From IMG/VR virus record IMGVR_UViG_3300047321_000238, positions 183,884 through 247,883 of that record: a DNA stretch of 64,000 nucleotides; one strand, written 5' to 3'. The position numbers were made by a program, and so were the translations under genes. The notes under the pieces are model-generated. The model ran no database searches. It was not told the origin of the DNA and saw nothing but the letters and a program-made list of their open reading frames with translations. This document shows positions 6,067-46,400 of this stretch, one piece after another (the stretch's first letter is position 1; each line of letters starts with the position of its first letter).

Positions 6067-6097
6067 AAAAAGAAGAAGCCGTAATGGCTTCTTTTTC
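6067..6097. terminator. Bidirectional intrinsic terminator
   Basis: AGAAGCC-N5-GGCTTCT stem flanked by A and T tracts between convergent genes. Confidence 0.8.
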
Positions 6098-7020
6098 TAT
6101 TCTACATTACTTTTTGTACGTTGCATCATTGCGTTCTGAATGTTCGCACAGATCAACGTGTTCTCTAATAAACTACACAATGCTAAGTTTACATATTCCC
6201 AAACAGGTAGAACTTTTAAATAAGTTAAATAGTCAAATTTATATTTGTAATCTAGATTGTTATATTGAAGATTTCCATTAATTTTATTTGCACGGTTTTT
6301 ATGAATATCAAGGTCAAAGATATAAGTGGACTTGTTATTTATGCCGTGTATAATTCTTTGTTCTATGTGGTAGTTAACATCGTCTAATAAATCGTATCCT
6401 ATAGAGTTAGCTTTCTTATTAGCTATTAATATAATATTTGAATCATAAAATAAAGATGATAAGTTATGAGTATTATTATTTGCAATTATAATAGTAGACT
6501 TTTCTCTTCTTAATATTTCAGTTAAGTATTTTATATAGTGATTATTATTATCGTCTGTTACTATTAAGACCTTGCTCTTATCTAATGGCACTTTCTCGTA
6601 ACGAAGTAAAGATAAGATACCTTTTGCTATGCACGGTTGTGTAATATCTTCTCTAGTCATTAAAGATCCTACATTAGGAATAGATAAACAATCTACATCT
6701 TTAAAAGGTACAATATTATTCGCAAGGTTTTCATTGGGTGTTTCAAGGATAATGCCGTGAACATTAAAGTCATTATTATACTTATCAATGACTTGTATGG
6801 CCTTCTCCTTATTGTTACTGAACACGTCAACAACATCAAGTTTAATATTGCAATATTCACAATATTGTTTTAACACATCCATATAGTATTTATACTTTGA
6901 ACTTCTAGTTGTTCTTATTATAACTAAAGAGGGGTATACTCTTTGCATTCTTAGCAGACTAGTTCTTATCCTTGCATTCTTTAAAATGTTTTCTATTATT
7001 ATTTTAGTATCAATAATCAT
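6097..7020 (-). CDS. FolD-like (methylene-THF dehydrogenase/cyclohydrolase fold) protein with degenerate catalytic and cofactor motifs
   Basis: FolD landmarks YNNDFNVHGII, PFKDVD, PCIAKGILSLL, IFDLD and LLENT; 307 aa, close to full FolD length. Confidence 0.8.
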   Translation of the reverse strand: MIIDTKIIIENILKNARIRTSLLRMQRVYPSLVIIRTTRSSKYKYYMDVLKQYCEYCNIKLDVVDVFSNNKEKAIQVIDKYNNDFNVHGIILETPNENLANNIVPFKDVDCLSIPNVGSLMTREDITQPCIAKGILSLLRYEKVPLDKSKVLIVTDDNNNHYIKYLTEILRREKSTIIIANNNTHNLSSLFYDSNIILIANKKANSIGYDLLDDVNYHIEQRIIHGINNKSTYIFDLDIHKNRANKINGNLQYNNLDYKYKFDYLTYLKVLPVWEYVNLALCSLLENTLICANIQNAMMQRTKSNVE

Positions 7021-7121: not shown

Positions 7122-7496
7122 TTAATCTAGATATTCCACTTTGAGATCTGCTGATATTAAACTTAATGAATACACCATTTCATCGTCATTGTTTAATCTT
7201 ACTTCTTTACGCATTACGTAAGGACAATATAAGTGTATTGTAACTTGTCCATCTGGTGAACATATTATTAGACTTTGTCCTTCTTTTAAATGAGCAATGT
7301 TTTGATCTTTAGTTATTAAATCAACTACACAGTTTTTTCTTCCTACAGAATGAAAGTCTGGACCTTGACTGGATCCCATAGTGAATACAGGAGCAGTCTC
7401 TCTTGTGATTTGATAACTAACAGAGTCTGCTGTAATTGTTATTTCTGTTGCATTTTCTAATTTATTTATTTGTTGTACATAACTTAATAATTCCAT
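7122..7496 (-). CDS. Hypothetical protein, possibly a diverged tail-tube-like structural paralog
   Basis: SVSYQITRETAPVFTMGS resembles a motif recalled from large Firmicutes phage structural proteins (unverified). Confidence 0.45.
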   Translation of the reverse strand: MELLSYVQQINKLENATEITITADSVSYQITRETAPVFTMGSSQGPDFHSVGRKNCVVDLITKDQNIAHLKEGQSLIICSPDGQVTIHLYCPYVMRKEVRLNNDDEMVYSLSLISADLKVEYLD

Positions 7497-7849
7497 TATA
7501 TTATCTCCTCAGTTGTAAAAGATGCAGTTATATTTATACTTCCCCTGTCTGTAATGATTATTGGTACTTGTATTTTATCTATGGAAGATGTGACTATATC
7601 TATAGTTTTGTTACCATTAGTAAATGTACAATTCTTTATGTTGTCTCCAAACATGCCTATTCCATCTATGTGTAACTGCAATATACATATCATTCTATTC
7701 CCATGTTCGTTTATAGCCTCTACATTTATGAAAGTGTTTATTGGTGATCCATTGTAAATAAAATCGTTATTTTCAAATTCTATATCTATAGCTGTTGGAT
7801 AGCTATTAATTAAATATATTTCAGTATTTATATGTTTTAATAATTCCAT
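7496..7849 (-). CDS. Hypothetical protein
   Basis: AAGGAGG RBS places the start at MELLKHINTE rather than the longer ORF-track start. Confidence 0.7.
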   Translation of the reverse strand: MELLKHINTEIYLINSYPTAIDIEFENNDFIYNGSPINTFINVEAINEHGNRMICILQLHIDGIGMFGDNIKNCTFTNGNKTIDIVTSSIDKIQVPIIITDRGSINITASFTTEEII

Positions 7850-7899
7850 AATTTCCTCCTTAATAAGCATGCTTTTTTGTAAAAGAATAGACACTAGAC

Positions 7900-11377: not shown

Positions 11378-11506
11378 CTACTTACTTTTCTTAGCAGTAG
11401 CTTTATCTTTAGTCTTAGTTGGTTTAGCTTTAGAATCTTTAACTAGTGAAGTTATTTCTTTAACTTCTTTAGGTTGATGTCCTACATATTCTTTAAGTTC
11501 TAACAT
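11378..11506 (-). CDS. Small Lys-rich protein (42 aa, not in ORF track)
   Basis: MLELKEYVGHQPKEVKEITSLVKDSKAKPTKTKDKATAKKSK; AGGAGGTGA RBS; fills the gap between genes. Confidence 0.7.
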   Translation of the reverse strand: MLELKEYVGHQPKEVKEITSLVKDSKAKPTKTKDKATAKKSK

Positions 11507-11522
11507 TACATTCACCTCCTTG

Positions 11523-12236
11523 TTATTTCCATCCTCTGCAATAGTTCTTATAAGAGCAACTTTGACACATGTGTGATTCTCTTGGGTAAAAGGCTTTATT
11601 GTTTATCCCTGTAGCTACTCCTTCTATAGTAGCAAGTAACCTATTATAATCGTTTTCTGTTCTTGCTGTTATGAAGTCTTTACCAGATTTAACATTATGG
11701 ACTTTAGTTGCATAGATTTGATTGTCCTTATTTGAGTTGTTAAATGACATCATATCTATTGAATACTTTAACTTAGTATCCACTTCTAATTGGTCAGGCA
11801 ATCTTGATGAGAAATTCATAATTAGAAATTCTAACTTCTTATCTTTGTTGATTGCAACTGGGTTCATTATTCCTTCTAATATAGTTTCTTTATGTGTTAT
11901 CATATATCTAACATCAGAATCTATTACAGCAATTTGATTACTGCATGCCCAGTTATAGAAGTTTCTTAATTGAAATATTGCATCGGTATATTGTTTTGTA
12001 CTTATGATATCCATGTAAGGTTTGGCTAGAGATTCAAACTTGGTTGTTATCATGTTCATAGTCGGAGTCTTCAAGTTGTTTACTACATAGAAGTAAAAGT
12101 ACTTAGATACTGTATTCAGTATTGAGTTTATTGAGAAAGCATCTTCTATTACTATTTTTTTATTATATTTCATATCGTACTTTGCAGGACAATATATATA
12201 ATCAAATAATTGTTGTTCTGTTAAACTAGTTTGCAT
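11523..12236 (-). CDS. Cas4/AddB-like PD-(D/E)XK-fold protein with four Fe-S-type cysteines and a degenerate nuclease motif
   Basis: N-terminal YIYCP and C-terminal FYPRESHMCQSCSYKNYC. Confidence 0.75.
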   Translation of the reverse strand: MQTSLTEQQLFDYIYCPAKYDMKYNKKIVIEDAFSINSILNTVSKYFYFYVVNNLKTPTMNMITTKFESLAKPYMDIISTKQYTDAIFQLRNFYNWACSNQIAVIDSDVRYMITHKETILEGIMNPVAINKDKKLEFLIMNFSSRLPDQLEVDTKLKYSIDMMSFNNSNKDNQIYATKVHNVKSGKDFITARTENDYNRLLATIEGVATGINNKAFYPRESHMCQSCSYKNYCRGWK

Positions 12237-12390
12237 TACTACACAACTCCATTCTTTTACATTCATCCTTTGATAACTGTCTATAAGAACTGTTTTCAGA
12301 GAACAAGTTTTTTAATATGTCAAATTCCTTAGTTGTAAGAATCGAGTTAACATCGTTATCATAGTTATGCACAAGAATGAAGTTGCTCAT
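12226..12390 (-). CDS. Hypothetical protein (54 aa, not in ORF track)
   Basis: MSNFILVHNYDNDVNSILTTKEFDILKNLF...; AAGGAGG RBS; overlaps the start of the next gene. Confidence 0.6.
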   Translation of the reverse strand: MSNFILVHNYDNDVNSILTTKEFDILKNLFSENSSYRQLSKDECKRMELCSNAN

Positions 12391-12403: not shown

Positions 12404-12871
12404 TTATATAATTTTGCTTTTTGTTTTATAATATATAGAACATGCTAATGAAAAGTGTGCACCTGGAGTATTAGGATTAGGTATTAATAATACCATTGGG
12501 TGATCCTTTCCTAGTTGTCCCTCTATAGCTTGGAATATAGATTCAATATAAGTTTGAGGTACTTTTATATCCTCATTTAATTCATTCAATAACTTTCTTG
12601 CTTTGAATAGATTTTCAAAGTCTGACTCTCCATATTTGTAAGCTATATTATGAAGAAGAGAAGCAGCTGCTAGAACATCTACGAACAATGCATAATTGTT
12701 ATCAGCTATTAACTTATCATTCTTAAGCAAGAAGAACATCCACTCTGTTACTTGAACTGCATCTTCAGCAGTTTCATCAGTAGCATAAATTTCTACAGCT
12801 TTTGAAGTTAACTCTTTAATGCTTATATCTTGTATTCTTTCTACATAAGTACTATATGTTGATTTATCCAT
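12404..12871 (-). CDS. HD-domain-like protein with degenerate metal ligands
   Basis: DVLAAASLLHNI in place of the usual LLHD; IFQAIEGQLG in place of an aIxxHxG motif. Confidence 0.5.
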   Translation of the reverse strand: MDKSTYSTYVERIQDISIKELTSKAVEIYATDETAEDAVQVTEWMFFLLKNDKLIADNNYALFVDVLAAASLLHNIAYKYGESDFENLFKARKLLNELNEDIKVPQTYIESIFQAIEGQLGKDHPMVLLIPNPNTPGAHFSLACSIYYKTKSKII

Positions 12872-12885
12872 TAAGTGTTATCCCC

Positions 12886-13158
12886 CTAGTTCTCTTCTTT
12901 ATTTGCTTTTGCAAACTCTGCTATATGTTCATCATGTATTGCTTTAACACAATCCATACATATGCATTGGTCTACTCCGCTAGTTCTTACGAATATAGCT
13001 TTCTTGTTTGCTATCTTCCCTTTAAGTTCTGCTTGTGCTTCATAAGCACCTATCTTCTTTTCTGCACAAAGTTTCTTTGCACATATTGTACAGTAATCAT
13101 TGTCACCTGCTATTTTAAGAAAATCATTTATAGCTGTAACTCCATTATATATTGCCAT
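12886..13158 (-). CDS. Small zinc-finger-like hypothetical protein
   Basis: CTIC and CICMDC motifs; AAGGAGG RBS. Confidence 0.65.
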   Translation of the reverse strand: MAIYNGVTAINDFLKIAGDNDYCTICAKKLCAEKKIGAYEAQAELKGKIANKKAIFVRTSGVDQCICMDCVKAIHDEHIAEFAKANKEEN

Positions 13159-13184
13159 TATTATTCCTCCTTTAATTTATGTTT

Positions 13185-13200
13185 GGGGGACTTAGCCCCC
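13185..13200. other. Strong GC hairpin after the small-peptide cluster
   Basis: GGGGG-ACTTAG-CCCCC; no U-tract follows on the coding (minus) strand. Confidence 0.7.
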
Positions 13201-13208
13201 GTTATTTG

Positions 13209-13352
13209 CTATTTACCTTTTGTCATTTTAGCAGGCATAGTAGTTGATTTCTTAGCTGCAGGTTTAGTAGCAGTTTTCTTTGCTCCCTTTTTAGCAGTTG
13301 CTTTTTTATCAGTTGCCTTAGCATCTTTTTTAGCGAATGGTATGAAAGCCAT
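13209..13352 (-). CDS. Histone-H1-like Lys/Ala-rich peptide (47 aa, not in ORF track)
   Basis: MAFIPFAKKDAKATDKKATAKKGAKKTATKPAAKKSTTMPAKMTKGK; AGGAGGTGA RBS. Confidence 0.8.
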   Translation of the reverse strand: MAFIPFAKKDAKATDKKATAKKGAKKTATKPAAKKSTTMPAKMTKGK

Positions 13353-13386
13353 AATGTTCACCTCCTTTTATCATTTGTTAGTTAAC

Positions 13387-13527
13387 CTACTTGCTAGCAC
13401 TCATTCTTGTAGCATTGCTAATTGTTTTAGCATTGCAAGTAGTAACTTTGTTTGTAGTTAAACTTGATCCTATTGAACTAGGAACAACTACAGATGGTCC
13501 AGATGTCTTCTTTGGAAATGTAGGCAT
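13387..13527 (-). CDS. Small basic Ser/Thr-rich peptide (46 aa, not in ORF track)
   Basis: MPTFPKKTSGPSVVVPSSIGSSLTTNKVTTCNAKTISNATRMSASK; AGGAGGTGA RBS. Confidence 0.8.
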   Translation of the reverse strand: MPTFPKKTSGPSVVVPSSIGSSLTTNKVTTCNAKTISNATRMSASK

Positions 13528-13560
13528 AGATTTCACCTCCTTATAATGTATTGCTTACTA

Positions 13561-13689
13561 CTATTTACTTGCACTCATTCTTGTACTTTTGTTAGCAGTC
13601 TTTGCATTTGGTGCAGTTGGTTTTTTAGTAGTTAAGCTTTTACCAATCTTTGCAGGTTTAGTAATTTTTGTTGTAGTCTTCTTAGCCAT
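13561..13689 (-). CDS. Small basic Lys/Thr-rich peptide (42 aa), paralog of 13387-13527
   Basis: MAKKTTTKITKPAKIGKSLTTKKPTAPNAKTANKSTRMSASK; GGAGGTGA RBS. Confidence 0.8.
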   Translation of the reverse strand: MAKKTTTKITKPAKIGKSLTTKKPTAPNAKTANKSTRMSASK

Positions 13690-13718
13690 GTTAGTCACCT
13701 CCCTTCAATGTCATGTTA

Positions 13719-14903
13719 TTAAGATTGGATAATGATTTGGTCATATCTCTTGTTATCTTCTTTTTTACATTCCATACATAGAGAGTAGTAAGGTCTGAAC
13801 TTAGTGTAGGTTCTTCCTTTGAATGAAGACTTCTTGTTTTTGCTCCAGTCAATTTCAATAATCGCTCCTAGTTTATCTTCAGCCATATCATCTGCCCAGT
13901 ATATCTTAGCTCCACCTTTGTTCTTAGAAACATCATTGTAAACTAACCAAACTACAGAAGCTTCATATAATAATGTATTTGCTTCTTTTAAATCATCTAC
14001 GCCTGGTCTTCTATTACCATTAAGTTTTCTTAAGTGAGATGAAGAGAAAACAACTATGTCATAATCAACAGATAAGTCTTTAACAAAAGCTGCTGTGAAC
14101 TCTGCTTTTTGTTTATCTGATGTTGTATTAAAATCTAATTTAATATCATTTATAGAATCTATAGCTATTATGATATTCATTTCAGGATCGATAGACTTAA
14201 CAAAGGTTTGTACCTTTATGATATGCTTCTTTAAATCAGTTTGATTTTTAATCTTAGTAGTATCTTCTATTTTAAATAAGTTAGATTCTTCTCTAAGTTT
14301 CTTTAAACCAATTTCTCTTTTCTTTAATTGATCTTCAAAGATTAAAGCGTTATCATCATCGCCATGGTCTATCATGTTTTGAAATCTCTTTGGCTTAGAT
14401 GCAACTGCTATTGGTATTTGTTGTTCCATAGCAATTATTCTAGGAATGATTTCATTCTTACTATCATCTAATGAATAGTAAACACCATATAATTTATTTT
14501 CTTTGCAAGAACATATATCTTTAAGTATGTTCATCATTAAGGCAGACTTACCACTGTTTGATTCTCCAGCAAATAAGTAAAGTCCAGATTCTAAACCTTC
14601 AAGTCTTGCTTCCATTTCTGGATAACCAGGTATCTTATATCCGTCTCCTTTGTTCCATGCTCTTTCATCAAAGTTCTCATAATCATTTCTAGTTGTTGCA
14701 AAGAAATCTTCCATAATAACATCTTCTGATGATTCTACAGTTTCTTCTTCTTTTAAAAGAACGTTCTCAAGAGTTTGTACAGAATCTACATTGTAGATAT
14801 CTTGGTCATCTTGCTCTATGATATCTTTGCTTTCTATAACTTCCTCTTTGATAATCTTTGGAACAATATTAACTGATGGTTTTTTCCCTGGTAACTTAAT
14901 CAT
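13719..14903 (-). CDS. DnaB-like (SF4) replicative helicase
   Basis: Walker A AGESNSGKS; YYSLDD; Walker B IIAIDS; SHLRK...RRPGVDDLKE; KNKK. Confidence 0.88.
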   Translation of the reverse strand: MIKLPGKKPSVNIVPKIIKEEVIESKDIIEQDDQDIYNVDSVQTLENVLLKEEETVESSEDVIMEDFFATTRNDYENFDERAWNKGDGYKIPGYPEMEARLEGLESGLYLFAGESNSGKSALMMNILKDICSCKENKLYGVYYSLDDSKNEIIPRIIAMEQQIPIAVASKPKRFQNMIDHGDDDNALIFEDQLKKREIGLKKLREESNLFKIEDTTKIKNQTDLKKHIIKVQTFVKSIDPEMNIIIAIDSINDIKLDFNTTSDKQKAEFTAAFVKDLSVDYDIVVFSSSHLRKLNGNRRPGVDDLKEANTLLYEASVVWLVYNDVSKNKGGAKIYWADDMAEDKLGAIIEIDWSKNKKSSFKGRTYTKFRPYYSLCMECKKEDNKRYDQIIIQS

Positions 14904-14915
14904 GACTTCTTCCCC

Positions 14916-15956
14916 CTATTTATATATCTTGCATTCTTTCCCTACACATAATCCACTATCTTTAATTGATGCACAACCGTATCTTCTTCCCGATTGTACT
15001 TGTTGATAAGCACTTAACACTGTTGTATTAATCTCTGATTCTGAAAGGCTTGGATCATTTCTCTCATCATTCCATTTATGTAACATAGATGAAGTAGTGT
15101 CAAAATCAACACCTTGTTGAAAGAAGGCAGAGGCTAGTATAATAGTAGTGTTATTTCTATTCCCCTCTGCACAACCATTTTTATATATGTCTTGAATGCA
15201 ACTAGGGAATTTAACTTTAGATAAATCAACATTGGTAGGAATTGCTCTGTTCTTTTGTTTTTGTAATGCTACTTCTTTTAAAGTAGTTTTTATGGAGTTA
15301 TATTTATTAATAGCTTTATCAACAGGTTGTACTTCTTTTGAAGTAACACTCTTTGGGCTTGTAGCATATTCTCTAATCTCTTCATATGTAAACTTTAATA
15401 TGTCTGCATATGTGATTGGAACTTTATATAAGCCTGTCTTACCGTTGATACTGTTTGGTAATCTTAATAGTCTTTTCTTATCATATATCTTTATATCTAT
15501 TATCGGTAGGATAGTGTTTTCACTTAACTCTTTAGCTATTATCTTGTAGTATACATTCAAGTCTTTATCAGGCTTTATGTTAAATACTTTAGCAGGTATC
15601 ATTAAGTGGAAACCTTTCTTTCCTGTGAAATAGAACTTTATATAATCTGTTGGTATATCGTACTGTAGATTAAGATATGTAATGATTCTAGCTAAGTCAG
15701 CTTTTAGTTTGCTATATTCTTCGTTAGAATTGAACTCCATGTCTAAGTCTAGATACATGGGACCAAACAAGTCACTATCGTTTTGATCGTCTTTATTATA
15801 TTGAAATACTGTAGCATATACATCAGTGTTATTAAACTTACTTCTTATTTCAGTTTTTTTATCTATTGAAGTATATATCTTTCTTCCAAATACTTTTTGA
15901 GAATTAATATTATACGTTCCACCCATTTCTATATACCACATACGTCCATCCTCCAT
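14916..15956 (-). CDS. Archaeo-eukaryotic-type primase with a C-terminal PriCT/PriL-like domain
   Basis: YLDLD, FTGKKGFH and IYDKKRLLRLP motifs; C-terminal PSCI...EGNRNN...YGC...C...C. Confidence 0.85.
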   Translation of the reverse strand: MEDGRMWYIEMGGTYNINSQKVFGRKIYTSIDKKTEIRSKFNNTDVYATVFQYNKDDQNDSDLFGPMYLDLDMEFNSNEEYSKLKADLARIITYLNLQYDIPTDYIKFYFTGKKGFHLMIPAKVFNIKPDKDLNVYYKIIAKELSENTILPIIDIKIYDKKRLLRLPNSINGKTGLYKVPITYADILKFTYEEIREYATSPKSVTSKEVQPVDKAINKYNSIKTTLKEVALQKQKNRAIPTNVDLSKVKFPSCIQDIYKNGCAEGNRNNTTIILASAFFQQGVDFDTTSSMLHKWNDERNDPSLSESEINTTVLSAYQQVQSGRRYGCASIKDSGLCVGKECKIYK

Positions 15957-43310: not shown

Positions 43311-44846
43311 TTACAGTACTAATTGTGGATATATTGTTAAACTACCTGCTCCTTGAACTTTTATAGGAACTTGCAAATCACCTGTTGATAGAGTAGCAAC
43401 TGTTAAAGTTTTGCTACCACTAGAAGTAAATATACCATTACCTTTTAAAGTTAATTGTAAATTTGTTACGATATAATTACCTGAGTAGTTTTGACAATTG
43501 ATTGTGCTATAAGTATTTATATCAGTTCCTTCATATTTATAAGATCCAAGTTCATATTTAACATTAATGTTTGTAGGAACGAATGGACTTAAGTATTCTA
43601 CTTCTCCCAAAGCATTAACTATCCATATATTTTCACTTTGATCTGTTCCTATATGAGATGGTTGATTACTTAGAGTGTCTGTAATTACAAACTTTTCATT
43701 TGCAACATCAAAGTTCATGAATATACAAGCAGTAGGAGATGCACATACTAAGAATGAGTTATTTTTAACTCCTACAAATCCTCTGAAGTAATCTACAGTA
43801 GGTTGTACAAAACTCTTAAAAGTTAATGTATTAGCAGCCATATCTATTAGGAAAGTATAAATACCGTATCCAGTTAGATTGGCTGGAGTTGAAGAAATCG
43901 TATGCTCATATATTGCAATATTTAAATATTGCTTACCATTTGCAGTTGTTATAAAAGGTTCATATTTAACATTAAGGTTAGCAGCGAAAACTGGAAGTTG
44001 AGTTATTGAACCCCAAGTAATTGTTGGATCTGCTTCTGTACATATAGTAGCCAGAGTAGCTTGTGTTGTATCAAATTTATATCTAGTGAATGCAAATTTA
44101 TTAGTACCTGTATTATGCCATGGTGCGAAAGTATAGAATTCTGTATCGCTAACGTTTATAGTATCTGAATAACAAGTTCCAAAATCTAGAGTAGATGTTT
44201 TAGCACCTAACGTAAAAACTTCATTTAAAGCTGTTGTCTTATTATATCTTTTTATATTAACTGTTCCATATCTCTTTTTAGATGCATGGAATATATGAGT
44301 ACTATTTTCTTTGATTGCATTTGACCAACCATAAGTTAAATAATCTTCAATAGTAGTTTGAGTTAAAGTTATTTTATCTATTTTTACAAAGTAATCATGG
44401 AAAGTTGTTGCACTCATTATATAATATAAATAGTTAACATCTTGTCCACAATAAGCCCGTACAAAAGGATAAGTAGTTGGTATAGCTCCATAACTTATAG
44501 AAGTTTGCAAAGTAACCTCTCCGTTACTTTCTTTTATTTTCATAAGTCTCATTGTATTAGAAGCTCTTGTTCCCATAACCCAAACATAACTTATTGTTGG
44601 ATCATATCTATCTGTAACAACTGTATCTCCTTGAGTTTTTGAACTATGAATCCAAGAATGATTTAACATAAGTTTTTGAGACATACTTACATCAGCAATA
44701 TCACCTAATGTTGGAAATAGCTTAAGTGGTTTTGGTATCATTTGTGCTTTGTCGTAGTAATGTGCATTAATGATATAGCCTAATGGAGTTTCTACTACCT
44801 TTTGTATTGAACCTGAAATTGAGTTATTGTCTAAAATTTTAGCCAT
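43311..44846 (-). CDS. Beta-propeller-like virion/adhesin protein
   Basis: All-beta pattern; IGTDQSENIWI; paralog of 44868-46400. Confidence 0.55.
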   Translation of the reverse strand: MAKILDNNSISGSIQKVVETPLGYIINAHYYDKAQMIPKPLKLFPTLGDIADVSMSQKLMLNHSWIHSSKTQGDTVVTDRYDPTISYVWVMGTRASNTMRLMKIKESNGEVTLQTSISYGAIPTTYPFVRAYCGQDVNYLYYIMSATTFHDYFVKIDKITLTQTTIEDYLTYGWSNAIKENSTHIFHASKKRYGTVNIKRYNKTTALNEVFTLGAKTSTLDFGTCYSDTINVSDTEFYTFAPWHNTGTNKFAFTRYKFDTTQATLATICTEADPTITWGSITQLPVFAANLNVKYEPFITTANGKQYLNIAIYEHTISSTPANLTGYGIYTFLIDMAANTLTFKSFVQPTVDYFRGFVGVKNNSFLVCASPTACIFMNFDVANEKFVITDTLSNQPSHIGTDQSENIWIVNALGEVEYLSPFVPTNINVKYELGSYKYEGTDINTYSTINCQNYSGNYIVTNLQLTLKGNGIFTSSGSKTLTVATLSTGDLQVPIKVQGAGSLTIYPQLVL

Positions 44847-44867: not shown

Positions 44868-46400
44868 TTATAGTGCTTTAACAGCTACTTTAAGATTTCC
44901 AGAGTCTGTAATAGTTACTGGAATCGACATTGTATCAAGGTTAGATGTTGTAATAGTTTTAGTTCTTGTCCCATTATCAGTAAATTTACAATTACCATAA
45001 AGATTAATTTGCAAACTTGTAGACAAATAGTGTCCTTGATAATTTTTAACATATGCAACTACATTTGTAGTTATATCTGTTCCATTGTAGTTATAAACAT
45101 CTGATTCAAAATCTGCAAATATAGTTACTGGCATTACATTTGAAATCATCTCTATGCTTGAATCAGCATATTGAATATAAAGATTATTATTACTATCGCA
45201 ACCGATTTGACTTATAGGTATATCAAATGAAGATACTTTTTTATATGAAGTTGTCCCAGTATCCCATGTATAAATATGACAACCATTTTCATAAGCTAAC
45301 ATTAAAGTTTGATTATTTAATACAGGTAAAACTGTTTTATATATTATTGGATTAAAGTTCGTATAAGACACAAGTTTCCAATTGTTTTCATCTATAACTT
45401 CATACGTATATAGAGCTGAATCGTTAGCAGTGAGGGCTATAGCATTTGTGCCTCTATTGTAAGATAAATGATTTATATATTTTTTTCCTGTAACTGAATC
45501 AGTAAAATCTATCAATGTATTACATACATATAAATGAGAAGGGGATGTAAATGGAATTTTGCCAGCAGGCAATAAAGACATATCCACTGTCACTGTAGAA
45601 TTTACTACAGTATCTTTAGTGGTATTTAATACATATTTTCTATATGCAAAATAATGATCAGTCATTCCTAAACTTAAACCATCCCTAACTGCATAAAATA
45701 CTCCATTGCTATTCATATCAGATGGGAATATCTCAAAAAAATTTCCAGTAGCAAATGTCTCTGCCAAAATCCAAGTTACTGCATTAGTAATTTTATTATA
45801 TTTTCCAATATTATAAGTAGTAGTACTCATAGTAGTTGTTCCAAAATATATATACATATCAGTGTCTTTTAATATTTTAATAGTTCCCATAGTACCTAAA
45901 TTTACAGATGTTTGCACCATAGTTGTTTTATTTATATAACCAATATAAGCATATGCTGCACCAGCTTCTCGGTTTACTGTAAAGTATGCTTTTTGACTAT
46001 CTTGACTTATTAAATCTACACATGTGAAATAAGAAGTAAGAAAATCAGTCATTTGAGTATCTGTCCAAGTTCCATTTGAATTCTTGGTAAGTTTATGAAC
46101 ATATGCATTTCCAGTTATACCTAATATACTTTGAGCTGCCACATAACAAGTTGAAGGATCTACAGAGTCTATTAAATAACTATTGGTTGTTCTATTTCTA
46201 TACCAATGACTATTTACATAAGCAGTTTTACTTAAAATCATATCATTGTTTGCACCAACAAGTATTGGACAGAAATCGAAAGGGATTGGAGAAAGTGTAT
46301 TTTTATCGTACACTTGTCCATTTATTAAGAAGCTATCACCTAGCTCTACTAATTTAGATACATTTCCATTAAGTGAATTCGTTCCTAAAATTTTTGCCAT
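44868..46400 (-). CDS. Beta-propeller-like virion/adhesin protein
   Basis: MAKIL start; IGCDSNNNLYI; YxYxGTDIxT...NYxGxY shared with its neighbour. Confidence 0.55.
   Translation of the reverse strand: MAKILGTNSLNGNVSKLVELGDSFLINGQVYDKNTLSPIPFDFCPILVGANNDMILSKTAYVNSHWYRNRTTNSYLIDSVDPSTCYVAAQSILGITGNAYVHKLTKNSNGTWTDTQMTDFLTSYFTCVDLISQDSQKAYFTVNREAGAAYAYIGYINKTTMVQTSVNLGTMGTIKILKDTDMYIYFGTTTMSTTTYNIGKYNKITNAVTWILAETFATGNFFEIFPSDMNSNGVFYAVRDGLSLGMTDHYFAYRKYVLNTTKDTVVNSTVTVDMSLLPAGKIPFTSPSHLYVCNTLIDFTDSVTGKKYINHLSYNRGTNAIALTANDSALYTYEVIDENNWKLVSYTNFNPIIYKTVLPVLNNQTLMLAYENGCHIYTWDTGTTSYKKVSSFDIPISQIGCDSNNNLYIQYADSSIEMISNVMPVTIFADFESDVYNYNGTDITTNVVAYVKNYQGHYLSTSLQINLYGNCKFTDNGTRTKTITTSNLDTMSIPVTITDSGNLKVAVKAL

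What the first reader, a model, noticed from the sequence alone, without database searches (positions are those of the whole stretch)
13185..13710. Unannotated tandem array of three tiny basic peptides with ideal ribosome-binding sites
Seen: three ORFs of 42, 46 and 47 aa directly downstream of the helicase, each preceded by GGAGGTGA, with a GGGGG/CCCCC hairpin after the last. Two share 19 of their last 28 residues, including an invariant TRMSASK end, and have no acidic residues. The third has 15 Lys in 47 aa with KKATAKK and PAAKK, resembling histone H1 tails. Inference: these are highly expressed DNA-condensing or nucleoid-remodelling peptides, or virion core peptides. The conserved Ser/Thr-rich end could instead be a recognition signal for modification, packaging or proteolysis. 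No modifying enzyme is visible in the window.
Basis: partly seen in the sequence, partly recalled or inferred. Interest (0 to 1): 0.68.

Follow-up and report, generated by a model that had tools for sequence, protein, structure and literature searches.

The report
Conserved tiny basic phage peptides
Three real genes for very small, positively charged, unstructured peptides follow the replication helicase of an uncultured giant phage; they are conserved in its relatives, belong to no known family, and most likely coat nucleic acid, though this is untested.

Summary
On the minus strand, directly after a DnaB-like helicase, lie ORFs of 42, 46 and 47 aa. Each is preceded by GGAGGTGA plus a 5-nt spacer, and a GGGGG/CCCCC hairpin follows the last. 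The window is the end of a 248-kb phage genome with terminal repeats, distantly related to Bacillus phage 0305phi8-36.

The genes are real:
- Eight further metagenomic phage lineages carry the same layout: helicase, 1-2 "F1" peptides, 1-3 Lys-rich peptides, a GC hairpin, then a Cys-rich 85-96-aa protein.
- Pairwise dN/dS is 0.2-0.8.
- Conserved residues use different synonymous codons.
- Indels are in frame.

F1 (pepA, pepB) has only six clusters among 1.84 billion representative proteins. It has no Pfam, PHROG, NCBIfam or PDB match and is predicted disordered. Only R-[M/A]-S of the "TRMSASK" end is conserved family-wide.

GGAGGTGA occurs 12 times in the genome. Four of those sites precede small Lys-tailed peptides of the replication module, whereas primase and helicase have weak ribosome-binding sites.

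Best reading (confidence about 0.35): abundant disordered polycations, co-transcribed with replication genes, that bind nucleic acid. Virion-core peptides, RiPP precursors and signalling peptides are less likely. Function is untested.

The parts
13719..14903 (-). DnaB-like replicative helicase (394 aa). It is the gene directly upstream of the peptide array. It has a weak ribosome-binding site and an N-terminal basic Pro-rich stretch followed by an acidic stretch.
   Evidence: PF03796 DnaB_C at 1.6e-14 and phrog_243 at 1e-26. About 29% identical to the helicases of Bacillus phages 0305phi8-36, Edson and WH1 and of Moorella phage MTATph1. Only 4 nt of Shine-Dalgarno (SD) complementarity.
13695..13702 (-). 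Shine-Dalgarno site GGAGGTGA of pepA, 5 nt before the ATG.
13561..13689 (-). pepA, 42 aa, an F1-family peptide (short 'MAKK' N-terminus). pI 11.6, 11 Lys, no acidic residue.
   Evidence: F1 profile score 56.5 bits. 77% identical to metagenomic P0006.
13533..13540 (-). Shine-Dalgarno site GGAGGTGA of pepB, 5 nt before the ATG.
13387..13527 (-). pepB, 46 aa, an F1-family peptide ('MPTFPKK' N-terminus). pI 10.6, 17 Ser+Thr, predicted disordered.
   Evidence: 74% identical to P0004 of locus L006. AlphaFold2 with a 12-row alignment gives pLDDT 64 and pTM 0.18.
13358..13365 (-). Shine-Dalgarno site GGAGGTGA of pepC, 5 nt before the ATG. It sits in an 11-nt run complementary to the assumed 16S 3' end.
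13209..13352 (-). pepC, 47 aa, a Lys-rich F2a peptide (MAFxPFxKK head, K/A/T/P tail). It has 15 Lys.
   Evidence: Orthologues occur in L006 (43 aa, 34/43 identical, in-frame 4-codon indel, 9 synonymous and 9 non-synonymous codon differences) and in L020 (44 aa).
13185..13200 (-). GC hairpin (5-bp stem, 6-nt loop) between the last peptide gene and the next gene. There is no U-run on the coding strand.
   Evidence: Stable hairpins of unrelated sequence fold at the same place in L002, L016, L018, L020 and L021. L006 carries the same G5/C5 sequence, although its minimum-energy fold pairs it differently. L007 has no stable hairpin.
12886..13158 (-). Conserved Cys-rich 90-aa protein (CxxC ... CxCxxC ... 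H). It is the invariable downstream neighbour of the array.
   Evidence: Alignment A5 has invariant C23, C26, C65, C67, C70 and H78. AlphaFold2 pLDDT 78. No PDB fold match. No Pfam, PHROG or NCBIfam hit.
11378..11506 (-). A fourth small Lys-tailed peptide (42 aa, MLELKEYVG head plus K-rich tail) with the same GGAGGTGA and 5-nt spacer. It lies between the PD-(D/E)XK nuclease and the DUF1064 resolvase genes.
   Evidence: Orthologues occur in L002, L006, L007, L016 and L020.

Best explanation
The three ORFs are real protein-coding micro-genes of an uncultured ~248-kb jumbo phage. The host is inferred to be a low-GC, probably anaerobic, Gram-positive bacterium.

The genes lie in the replication module and are read from the same transcript as the primase and the DnaB-like helicase. 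Their near-perfect Shine-Dalgarno (SD) sites should give many more peptide molecules than helicase molecules. The hairpin after the last one probably marks or stabilises the 3' end of this highly translated segment.

The products are intrinsically disordered polycations. The Lys-rich type (pepC, and the fourth peptide at 11378-11506) has a short conserved head and a variable K/A/T/S/P tail. Like a linker-histone tail or a protamine, it most likely binds nucleic acid non-specifically by charge neutralisation. It would then coat or compact replicating phage DNA, or the host nucleoid.

The F1 type (pepA, pepB) is less charged. It carries two conserved short linear motifs: P-x-V-x-V-P-x-x-[IL]-G-x-S-L-T-T-x-K, and R-[MA]-S near the C-terminus. 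It most likely uses these to contact a protein partner that is not yet identified.

Shown: the genes, their conservation, purifying selection, position, SD strength, the lack of known relatives, and predicted disorder. Inferred: high abundance, nucleic-acid binding, and the biological role.
For: Conservation:
- The same layout is found in WIN, L002, L006, L007, L016, L018, L020 and L021: helicase, then F1 x1-2, then Lys-rich x1-3, then a hairpin, then the Cys-rich protein.
- Helicase nucleotide identity among these loci falls as low as 75%.

Coding evidence:
- Pairwise dN/dS for F1 is 0.19-0.80.
- Invariant Pro, Gly and Ser are written with different synonymous codons, for example Ser as AGC, AGT or TCT.
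- pepC and its L006 orthologue differ by an in-frame 4-codon indel.

Translation strength:
- GGAGGTGA occurs 12 times in the genome, and 4 of these sites precede the small peptides, each with a 5-nt spacer.
- The peptides have 8-11 nt of contiguous anti-SD complementarity, against 4 nt for primase and helicase. Only 10 of 241 ORFs of 100 aa or more reach 9 nt.

Operon context: gaps of 29-50 nt leave no room for separate promoters, and no promoter-like hit lies in them. The neighbours are primase, helicase, PD-(D/E)XK nuclease, DUF1064 resolvase, sigma factor, RecJ and DNA polymerase.

Physical chemistry: pI 10.6-11.6, 5-15 Lys, and 0-2 acidic residues. AlphaFold2 gives pTM 0.18 for pepB.

Precedents for early, replication-linked phage DNA-organising proteins are phi29 p6 (PMC10899789) and T4 MotB (cited in PMC11323111).
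Against: - There is no experimental or transcript evidence. No RNA run holds this sequence.
- Nucleic-acid binding is inferred from charge and composition alone.
- pepB-type F1 peptides carry only +6 net charge, and one relative (P0012) has acidic residues. A pure counter-ion role therefore fits F1 poorly.
- The strictly conserved motifs in F1 point to a specific partner, which could be a host protein.
- The distant relatives 0305phi8-36, WH1 and MTATph1 replicate with a syntenic module that lacks such peptides. The peptides are therefore accessory rather than core.
Confidence: 0.35

Rival explanations
1. Host-takeover or anti-defence micro-proteins. The conserved short motifs of F1 dock onto a specific host protein (for example a replication, transcription, chaperone or defence protein) and block or redirect it. 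The basic charge is incidental or serves to target an acidic surface.
For: - F1 has two strictly conserved short motifs separated by a variable linker, typical of peptides that fold on a partner.
- Copy number and type turn over quickly between close relatives, as in accessory host-interaction genes.
- The family is confined to one phage clade.
- The peptides are absent from distant relatives with the same replication module.
- Many characterised phage small proteins act this way (review PMC11323111).
Against: - The host is unknown and no partner is identified.
- The invariable position inside the replication operon, next to the helicase, is unusual for takeover genes. These usually cluster in early 'host-takeover' blocks.
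- The Lys-rich tails evolve by composition rather than by sequence.
Confidence: 0.25
2. Virion-packaged core peptides. These polycations would enter the capsid with the DNA, neutralise its charge and, where terminal Cys residues are present, cross-link like protamines.
For: - The Lys-rich composition.
- Terminal or near-terminal Cys recurs in relatives...SACK...KGC...RGC, CKSNCKGC, and MAC... heads.
- The genome is large (248 kb) and must be packed.
Against: - The genes are co-transcribed with primase and helicase in the replication module, far from the head genes.
- The window's own peptides lack the terminal Cys.
- No proteomic data exist.
- Related cultured phages lack them.
Confidence: 0.12
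3. Precursors of ribosomally made, post-translationally modified peptides (RiPPs), or substrates of another modifying enzyme. The Ser/Thr-rich conserved part would be the core or the recognition signal.
For: - The size (41-48 aa), the Ser/Thr richness and the Cys residues in some relatives.
- The genome encodes one generic 292-aa radical-SAM protein.
Against: - No maturase lies next to the peptides in any of nine loci. The neighbours are always replication genes.
- Cys is not conserved: Ser, Phe, Tyr or Gln occupy the same position.
- The radical-SAM gene is about 90 kb away, and its best family scores are far below the cut-offs.
- There is no Pkinase match and no NCBIfam precursor model hit.
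Confidence: 0.05
4. The ORFs matter mainly as translated spacers. They would regulate the downstream genes through translational coupling, or protect the mRNA through ribosome loading. The peptide sequences themselves would have little function.
For: - Very strong SD sites in a tight operon.
- A hairpin directly after the array.
- The Lys-rich tails are poorly conserved in sequence.
Against: - dN/dS is below 1.
- F1 residues are invariant yet written with different codons.
- The head motifs of the Lys-rich peptides are conserved.
- Gaps of 29-50 nt separate the ORFs, so they are not overlapping and coupled.
Confidence: 0.04

Closest known systems
Linker-histone (H1) C-terminal tails and bacterial H1-like Lys/Ala/Pro-rich proteins (Chlamydia Hc1/Hc2, Pseudomonas AlgP KPAA repeats). 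This comparison is from general knowledge.
   Same: pepC has 32% Lys, with Ala, Thr and Pro interspersed (KKATAKK, TKPAAKK). It is predicted disordered and has almost no acidic residues.
   Different: - It is a free-standing 47-aa peptide without any globular domain.
- It has no canonical S/T-P-K-K motif.
- There is no Pfam match and no detectable homology.
- The F1 peptides (pepA, pepB) are Ser/Thr-rich rather than Lys/Ala-rich.
Phage phi29 protein p6, a genome-organising 'histone-like' early protein (PMC10899789, PMC4974454)
   Same: It is a phage-encoded small protein expressed with the early replication genes. It coats phage DNA and assists replication and transcription switching, which is the role proposed here.
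   Different: - p6 is 90-104 aa, acidic at its C-terminus, folded and multimeric.
- There is no sequence similarity (no PHROG or Pfam hit).
- The peptides here are half that size and predicted disordered.
[quoted passage not shown] 54 in PMC11323111)
   Same: It is a phage protein made early that compacts host and phage DNA.
   Different: MotB is a larger folded protein. No homology is detected.
Protamines and adenovirus core peptides mu and pVII (general knowledge)
   Same: They are very small polycationic peptides that neutralise DNA charge. Terminal Cys residues in several relatives recall protamine cross-links.
   Different: - Those peptides are Arg-rich, whereas these are Lys-rich.
- Those are packaged with the genome, whereas these are encoded in a replication operon and have not been shown in virions.
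Arbitrium AimP and other RRNPP signalling pro-peptides (about 40-45 aa; PMC11323111)
   Same: The length is similar, and the C-terminal end differs between phage lineages.
   Different: - There is no hydrophobic signal sequence (GRAVY -0.2 to -1.0).
- No receptor gene lies nearby.
- The gene set looks like that of a lytic jumbo phage.

Membership tests
Linker histone H1 / bacterial H1-like proteins | Globular winged-helix domain (Pfam Linker_histone), or the Hc1/HC2 family profiles | tested here: not met
   No Pfam family at E <= 0.1 for pepA, pepB or pepC. The peptides are 42-47 aa.
Linker histone H1 / bacterial H1-like proteins | Lys/Ala/Pro-rich low-complexity tail with S/T-P-K-K or KPAA-type repeats | tested here: inconclusive
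   pepC has 15 Lys in 47 aa and contains KKATAKK and TKPAAKK, but no canonical S/T-P-K-K. pepA and pepB are Ser/Thr/Lys-rich and do not fit.
Linker histone H1 / bacterial H1-like proteins | Binds and condenses DNA | not testable with these tools
   Needs gel-shift, AFM or tweezers assays with synthetic peptide.
RiPP precursor peptides (lanthipeptide, ranthipeptide/SCIFF, sactipeptide, graspetide) | A maturase gene (radical SAM/SPASM, LanB/C/M, YcaO, ATP-grasp) in the same gene cluster | tested here: not met
   Nine loci show only replication genes around the peptides. In the genome itself, two radical-SAM hits are NrdG-like and one is generic, about 90 kb away.
RiPP precursor peptides (lanthipeptide, ranthipeptide/SCIFF, sactipeptide, graspetide) | Conserved modifiable core residues (Cys pattern, or Ser/Thr with Asp/Glu) | tested here: not met
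   Cys is present in only some members and is replaced by Ser, Phe, Tyr or Gln. Acidic residues are absent. The invariant residues are M1, P16, L23, T24, R41 and S43. No NCBIfam precursor model matches.
Arbitrium/RRNPP signalling pro-peptides | N-terminal secretion signal, and an adjacent TPR-type receptor gene | tested here: not met
   There is no hydrophobic segment. The neighbours are the helicase and the Cys-rich protein in every locus.
phi29 p6-type genome-organising protein | Sequence or profile homology to p6 | tested here: not met
   No PHROG or Pfam hit. No PDB sequence hit.
phi29 p6-type genome-organising protein | Encoded and expressed with the early replication genes, and very abundant | tested here: inconclusive
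   The position in the replication operon is met. Abundance is only inferred from SD strength. No RNA data exist.
Small basic ribosomal proteins (bL32, bL34, bL36) and minor small acid-soluble spore proteins | A match to the family profiles | tested here: not met
   No Pfam or NCBIfam hit at E <= 0.1 / 0.01. Resemblances seen by eye at the N-terminus were not supported.

The most novel reading that the evidence does not exclude
This phage clade may have evolved a modular set of free-standing micro-proteins, each with a short head motif and a poly-Lys tail. There are at least four in the replication module and one more at genome position 76 kb. Together with the F1 adaptor peptides, they would tether replication and recombination enzymes to DNA. 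Alternatively they would drive a charge-based condensate around replicating phage DNA. That would make a protein-light replication compartment in a Gram-positive jumbo phage, built from peptides of about 45 aa.
Probability: 0.12. Interest if true: 0.7.

Novelty: new variant of a known kind. Interest (0 to 1): 0.4.

Why it matters
If these peptides do coat or condense DNA, they would be the smallest free-standing nucleoid-type proteins known from a phage. They would also be a simple, chemically synthesisable model for charge-driven DNA organisation during replication of giant phages of Gram-positive hosts.

Even without a function, the result shows that conserved genes below 50 aa carry the strongest ribosome-binding sites in a jumbo-phage replication operon. 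Proteins of this class are easily lost in annotation and in tryptic proteomics.

The F1 family is confined to six clusters in 1.84 billion representative proteins. It has two strictly conserved short motifs, which gives a defined handle for partner hunting.

Tried and rejected
- Complex prediction of helicase plus pepB (the first attempt did not complete). Score 0.02, 'no answer'. This counts neither for nor against binding.
- Nucleotide search of 'phages' with 3 kb and tblastn with pepA: no match.
- IMG/VR scans with the helicase and with the F1 alignment: no confirmed locus.
- Word search with pepC: nothing at E <= 1.
- ESM Atlas look-alikes for pepB and pepC: no usable lead.
- PDB sequence searches: nothing.
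- Fold search of the Cys-rich neighbour: no match with E <= 0.001.
- Sequencing runs: only two DNA holders (a rhizosphere metagenome that may be the source, and a wastewater metagenome with a small share) and no RNA run. Expression could not be tested and read laying was not used.
- The helicase N-terminus (KLPGKKPSVNIVPK) resembles the F1 N-terminal half by eye. The F1 profile does not match the helicase or any ORF in the genome other than pepA and pepB, so no homology is claimed.
- By-eye resemblances to bL32, bL34, SspK and SCIFF were recalled from memory. The Pfam and NCBIfam scans do not support them.
- The 201-aa ORF on the plus strand (12856-13461) is the Phe/Leu/Cys-rich antisense reading of the Lys/Ala-rich genes. 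It cannot be conserved in relatives whose Lys-rich genes differ, so it is taken as spurious.
- Only genetic code 11 was used.

Full report
**What the window is.** The 64-kb window is the last quarter of a 247,883-bp IMG/VR virus record with direct terminal repeats. GC is about 30%, and almost all genes are on the minus strand. The upstream part encodes tail-fibre-like and other structural proteins.

The part from about 17.8 kb down to 1.6 kb is a replication module. In order, it holds:
- an archaeo-eukaryotic-type primase (14916-15956);
- a DnaB-like helicase (13719-14903);
- the three small ORFs;
- a Cys-rich 90-aa protein (12886-13158);
- a 155-aa protein;
- a PD-(D/E)XK nuclease (11523-12266);
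- a further small ORF;
- a DUF1064 resolvase;
- a sigma factor;
- RecJ;
- a FolD-like enzyme;
- a large DNA polymerase.

The helicase is about 29% identical to those of Bacillus jumbo phages 0305phi8-36, Edson and WH1 and of Moorella phage MTATph1. 0305phi8-36 shares the order primase, DnaB..., RecB, small ORF, RuvC. Two NrdG-like activases in the genome suggest an anaerobic host. The only DNA holders among public runs are a rhizosphere metagenome (possibly the source) and, with a small share, a wastewater metagenome.

**The observation.**
- pepA is 13689..13561 (42 aa), pepB is 13527..13387 (46 aa) and pepC is 13352..13209 (47 aa).
- Each ATG is preceded by GGAGGTGA with a 5-nt spacer.
- pepA and pepB align with 22 identical columns and share 19 of their last 28 residues, ending in TRMSASK. 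Neither has an acidic residue.
- pepC has 15 Lys.
- The GGGGG/CCCCC hairpin lies at 13185-13200.

**Are they genes?** Yes, on five lines of evidence.
- A profile of pepA and pepB found homologues of 41-48 aa in metagenomes. Looking up their contigs gave eight further lineages: L002-L005, L006, L007-L009, L016, L018-L019, L020 and L021.
- In all of them the peptide genes follow the helicase stop codon and precede the Cys-rich protein. Helicase nucleotide identity among these loci falls as low as 75%.
- Pairwise dN/dS for F1 is 0.19-0.80.
- The conserved Pro, Gly and Ser positions are written with different synonymous codons. Ser22 and Ser43 use AGC, AGT and TCT. Selection therefore acts on the peptide and not on an RNA.
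- pepC has orthologues in L006 and L020. The L006 copy differs by an in-frame 4-codon indel, with 9 synonymous and 9 non-synonymous codon changes.

**Anatomy of the families.** The F1 alignment (A4, 12 sequences) has invariant M1, P16, L23, T24, R41 and S43, and nearly invariant P11, V13, G20, S22 and T25. This amounts to a central motif P-x-V-x-V-P-x-x-[IL]-G-x-S-L-T-T-x-K and a C-terminal R-[MA]-S.

Relatives end in RMSACK, RASACN, RASVFKG, RASSFNK, RASAYQG or RMSAQKPKYN. Where a genome has two F1 copies, both share the same C-terminal type. That fits either recent duplication or gene conversion, or co-evolution with one partner.

The Lys-rich peptides vary much more between lineages:
- F2a has a MAFxPFxKK head (WIN, L006, L020).
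- F2b has an ...ELRGI..SGSSS head plus a K tail (L002, L007, L018, L021).
- F2c is a further type (L018).
- F3 has a MACKPNK head (L002, L007, L018, L021, L016).

Every locus has at least one F1 and at least one Lys-rich peptide. A fourth small peptide in the window (11378-11506, MLELKEYVG head plus K tail) is likewise conserved in five relatives. GGAGGTGA also precedes it in the window and in L002, L006 and L007, while L016 and L020 carry weaker variants.

**Novelty of the sequences.**
- There is no Pfam, PHROG or NCBIfam hit for any of the peptides.
- There is no PDB sequence hit and no Atlas lead.
- The exhaustive profile search of 1.84 billion representatives returned only six clusters, all 41-48 aa.
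- The distant cultured relatives have unrelated, non-basic proteins after their helicase.

**Expression signals.**
- GGAGGTGA occurs 12 times in the genome, against about 1.8 expected. Four of these sites, each with a 5-nt spacer, precede pepA, pepB, pepC and the fourth peptide.
- I measured the longest run complementary to the assumed Gram-positive 16S 3' end. The peptides have 8-11 nt and the primase and helicase have 4 nt. Only 10 of 241 ORFs of 100 aa or more reach 9 nt.
- Intergenic gaps of 29-50 nt leave no room for promoters, and the promoter scan found none there.
- The inference is that one transcript is translated far more often on the peptide cistrons than on the enzymes.
- A GC hairpin follows the last peptide gene in most lineages. 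The window has a G5/C5 stem. L002, L016, L018, L020 and L021 fold stable stems of unrelated sequence there. L006 carries the same G5/C5 sequence, but its minimum-energy fold pairs it differently. L007 has no stable hairpin.
- The hairpin lacks a U-run on the coding strand. I read it as a 3'-end, stabiliser or attenuator element rather than a classical terminator. This is inference.

**Structure.** AlphaFold2 with the 12-row alignment gives pLDDT 64 and pTM 0.18 for pepB, which means no stable fold. Together with the composition (pI 10.6-11.6, GRAVY -0.2 to -1.0), this indicates intrinsically disordered polycations.

**Mechanism.** The most economical explanation is that these are abundant, disordered, nucleic-acid-binding peptides made together with the replication enzymes.
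- The Lys-rich ones would act like linker-histone tails or protamines, by charge neutralisation and compaction or coating of DNA.
- F1 would use its two conserved short motifs to hold a protein partner.
- Known functional analogues, without homology, are phi29 p6 (PMC10899789) and T4 MotB (cited in PMC11323111).

I put this at about 0.35. The rivals are:
- Host-directed takeover or anti-defence peptides, 0.25. Supported by the motifs, the rapid turnover and the clade restriction.
- Virion core peptides, 0.12. Supported by recurrent terminal Cys in relatives. Weakened by the operon context.
- RiPP precursors or modification substrates, 0.05. No maturase nearby in nine loci, Cys not conserved, no kinase, and only a generic radical-SAM gene about 90 kb away.
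- Mere translated spacers, 0.04. Contradicted by selection on the amino-acid sequence.

An arbitrium-like signalling role was rejected because there is no signal sequence and no receptor gene.

**Limits.** There is no transcript, proteome or binding data, and the host is unknown. The complex prediction for helicase plus pepB gave no answer and is not used as evidence. The similarity seen by eye between the helicase N-terminus and F1 is not supported by the profile.

**Verdict.** This is a correct observation of a real, conserved and previously uncharacterised set of micro-genes. The interpretation as highly expressed DNA-binding peptides is plausible but unproven. The virion-core and modification-signal variants are less likely. 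Interest is moderate.

Noticed in passing
window 11378-11506 (-): A fourth small ORF (42 aa, MLELKEYVG head plus Lys-rich tail) has the same GGAGGTGA and 5-nt spacer. It lies between the PD-(D/E)XK nuclease and the DUF1064 resolvase genes and is conserved in five relatives.
   Followed up: partly
own genome G000:C1:76259-76405 (+), outside the window (L022:6260-6406): Another 48-aa peptide has a short head (..YGIGDRTSLSS..) and a K/T/S tail behind a strong SD. The ORF before it also ends in a poly-Lys run. The surrounding block of small plus-strand genes has no informative PHROG hits.
   Followed up: partly
window 12886-13158 (-): A strongly conserved 90-aa protein has invariant CxxC...CxCxxC...H (probably zinc-binding). 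It always lies directly after the peptide array. The AlphaFold2 model has pLDDT 78 but no PDB fold match and no family hit.
   Followed up: partly
window 14800-14903 (-), helicase N-terminus: The helicases of this clade carry an N-terminal extension absent from 0305phi8-36 and Moorella phage helicases. It has a basic Pro-rich stretch (KLPGxKPP..) followed by a very acidic stretch. The basic part resembles F1 by eye, but the F1 profile does not support this.
   Followed up: partly
loci L002:5460-5500, L007:5610-5650, L016:4285-4310, L018:1880-1900: A conserved motif (..TTACAACC..) lies between the hairpin and the SD of the Cys-rich gene in several relatives but not in the window. It could be a promoter or regulatory element.
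   Followed up: no
own genome G000:C1:106970-107848, 140658-141362, 162716-163222: There are three radical-SAM ORFs. Two are NrdG-like anaerobic ribonucleotide-reductase activases, which hint at an anaerobic host. One is a generic 292-aa enzyme with only weak MoaA/SPASM-type hits.
   Followed up: partly
window 7496-7894, 43311-44846, 44868-46400 (-): Three proteins share a C-terminal domain matching phrog_22549 / phrog_20698 (unknown function). One lies in the replication module and two are tandem paralogues in the structural region.
   Followed up: no
window 6097-7020 (-): A FolD-like tetrahydrofolate dehydrogenase/cyclohydrolase gene (phrog_7320) lies inside the replication module. It is an auxiliary nucleotide-metabolism gene.
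   Followed up: no
window 12856-13461 (+): A 201-aa Phe/Leu/Cys-rich ORF lies antisense to pepB, pepC and the Cys-rich gene. It is taken as a by-product of the A-rich coding strand and not as a gene.
   Followed up: no
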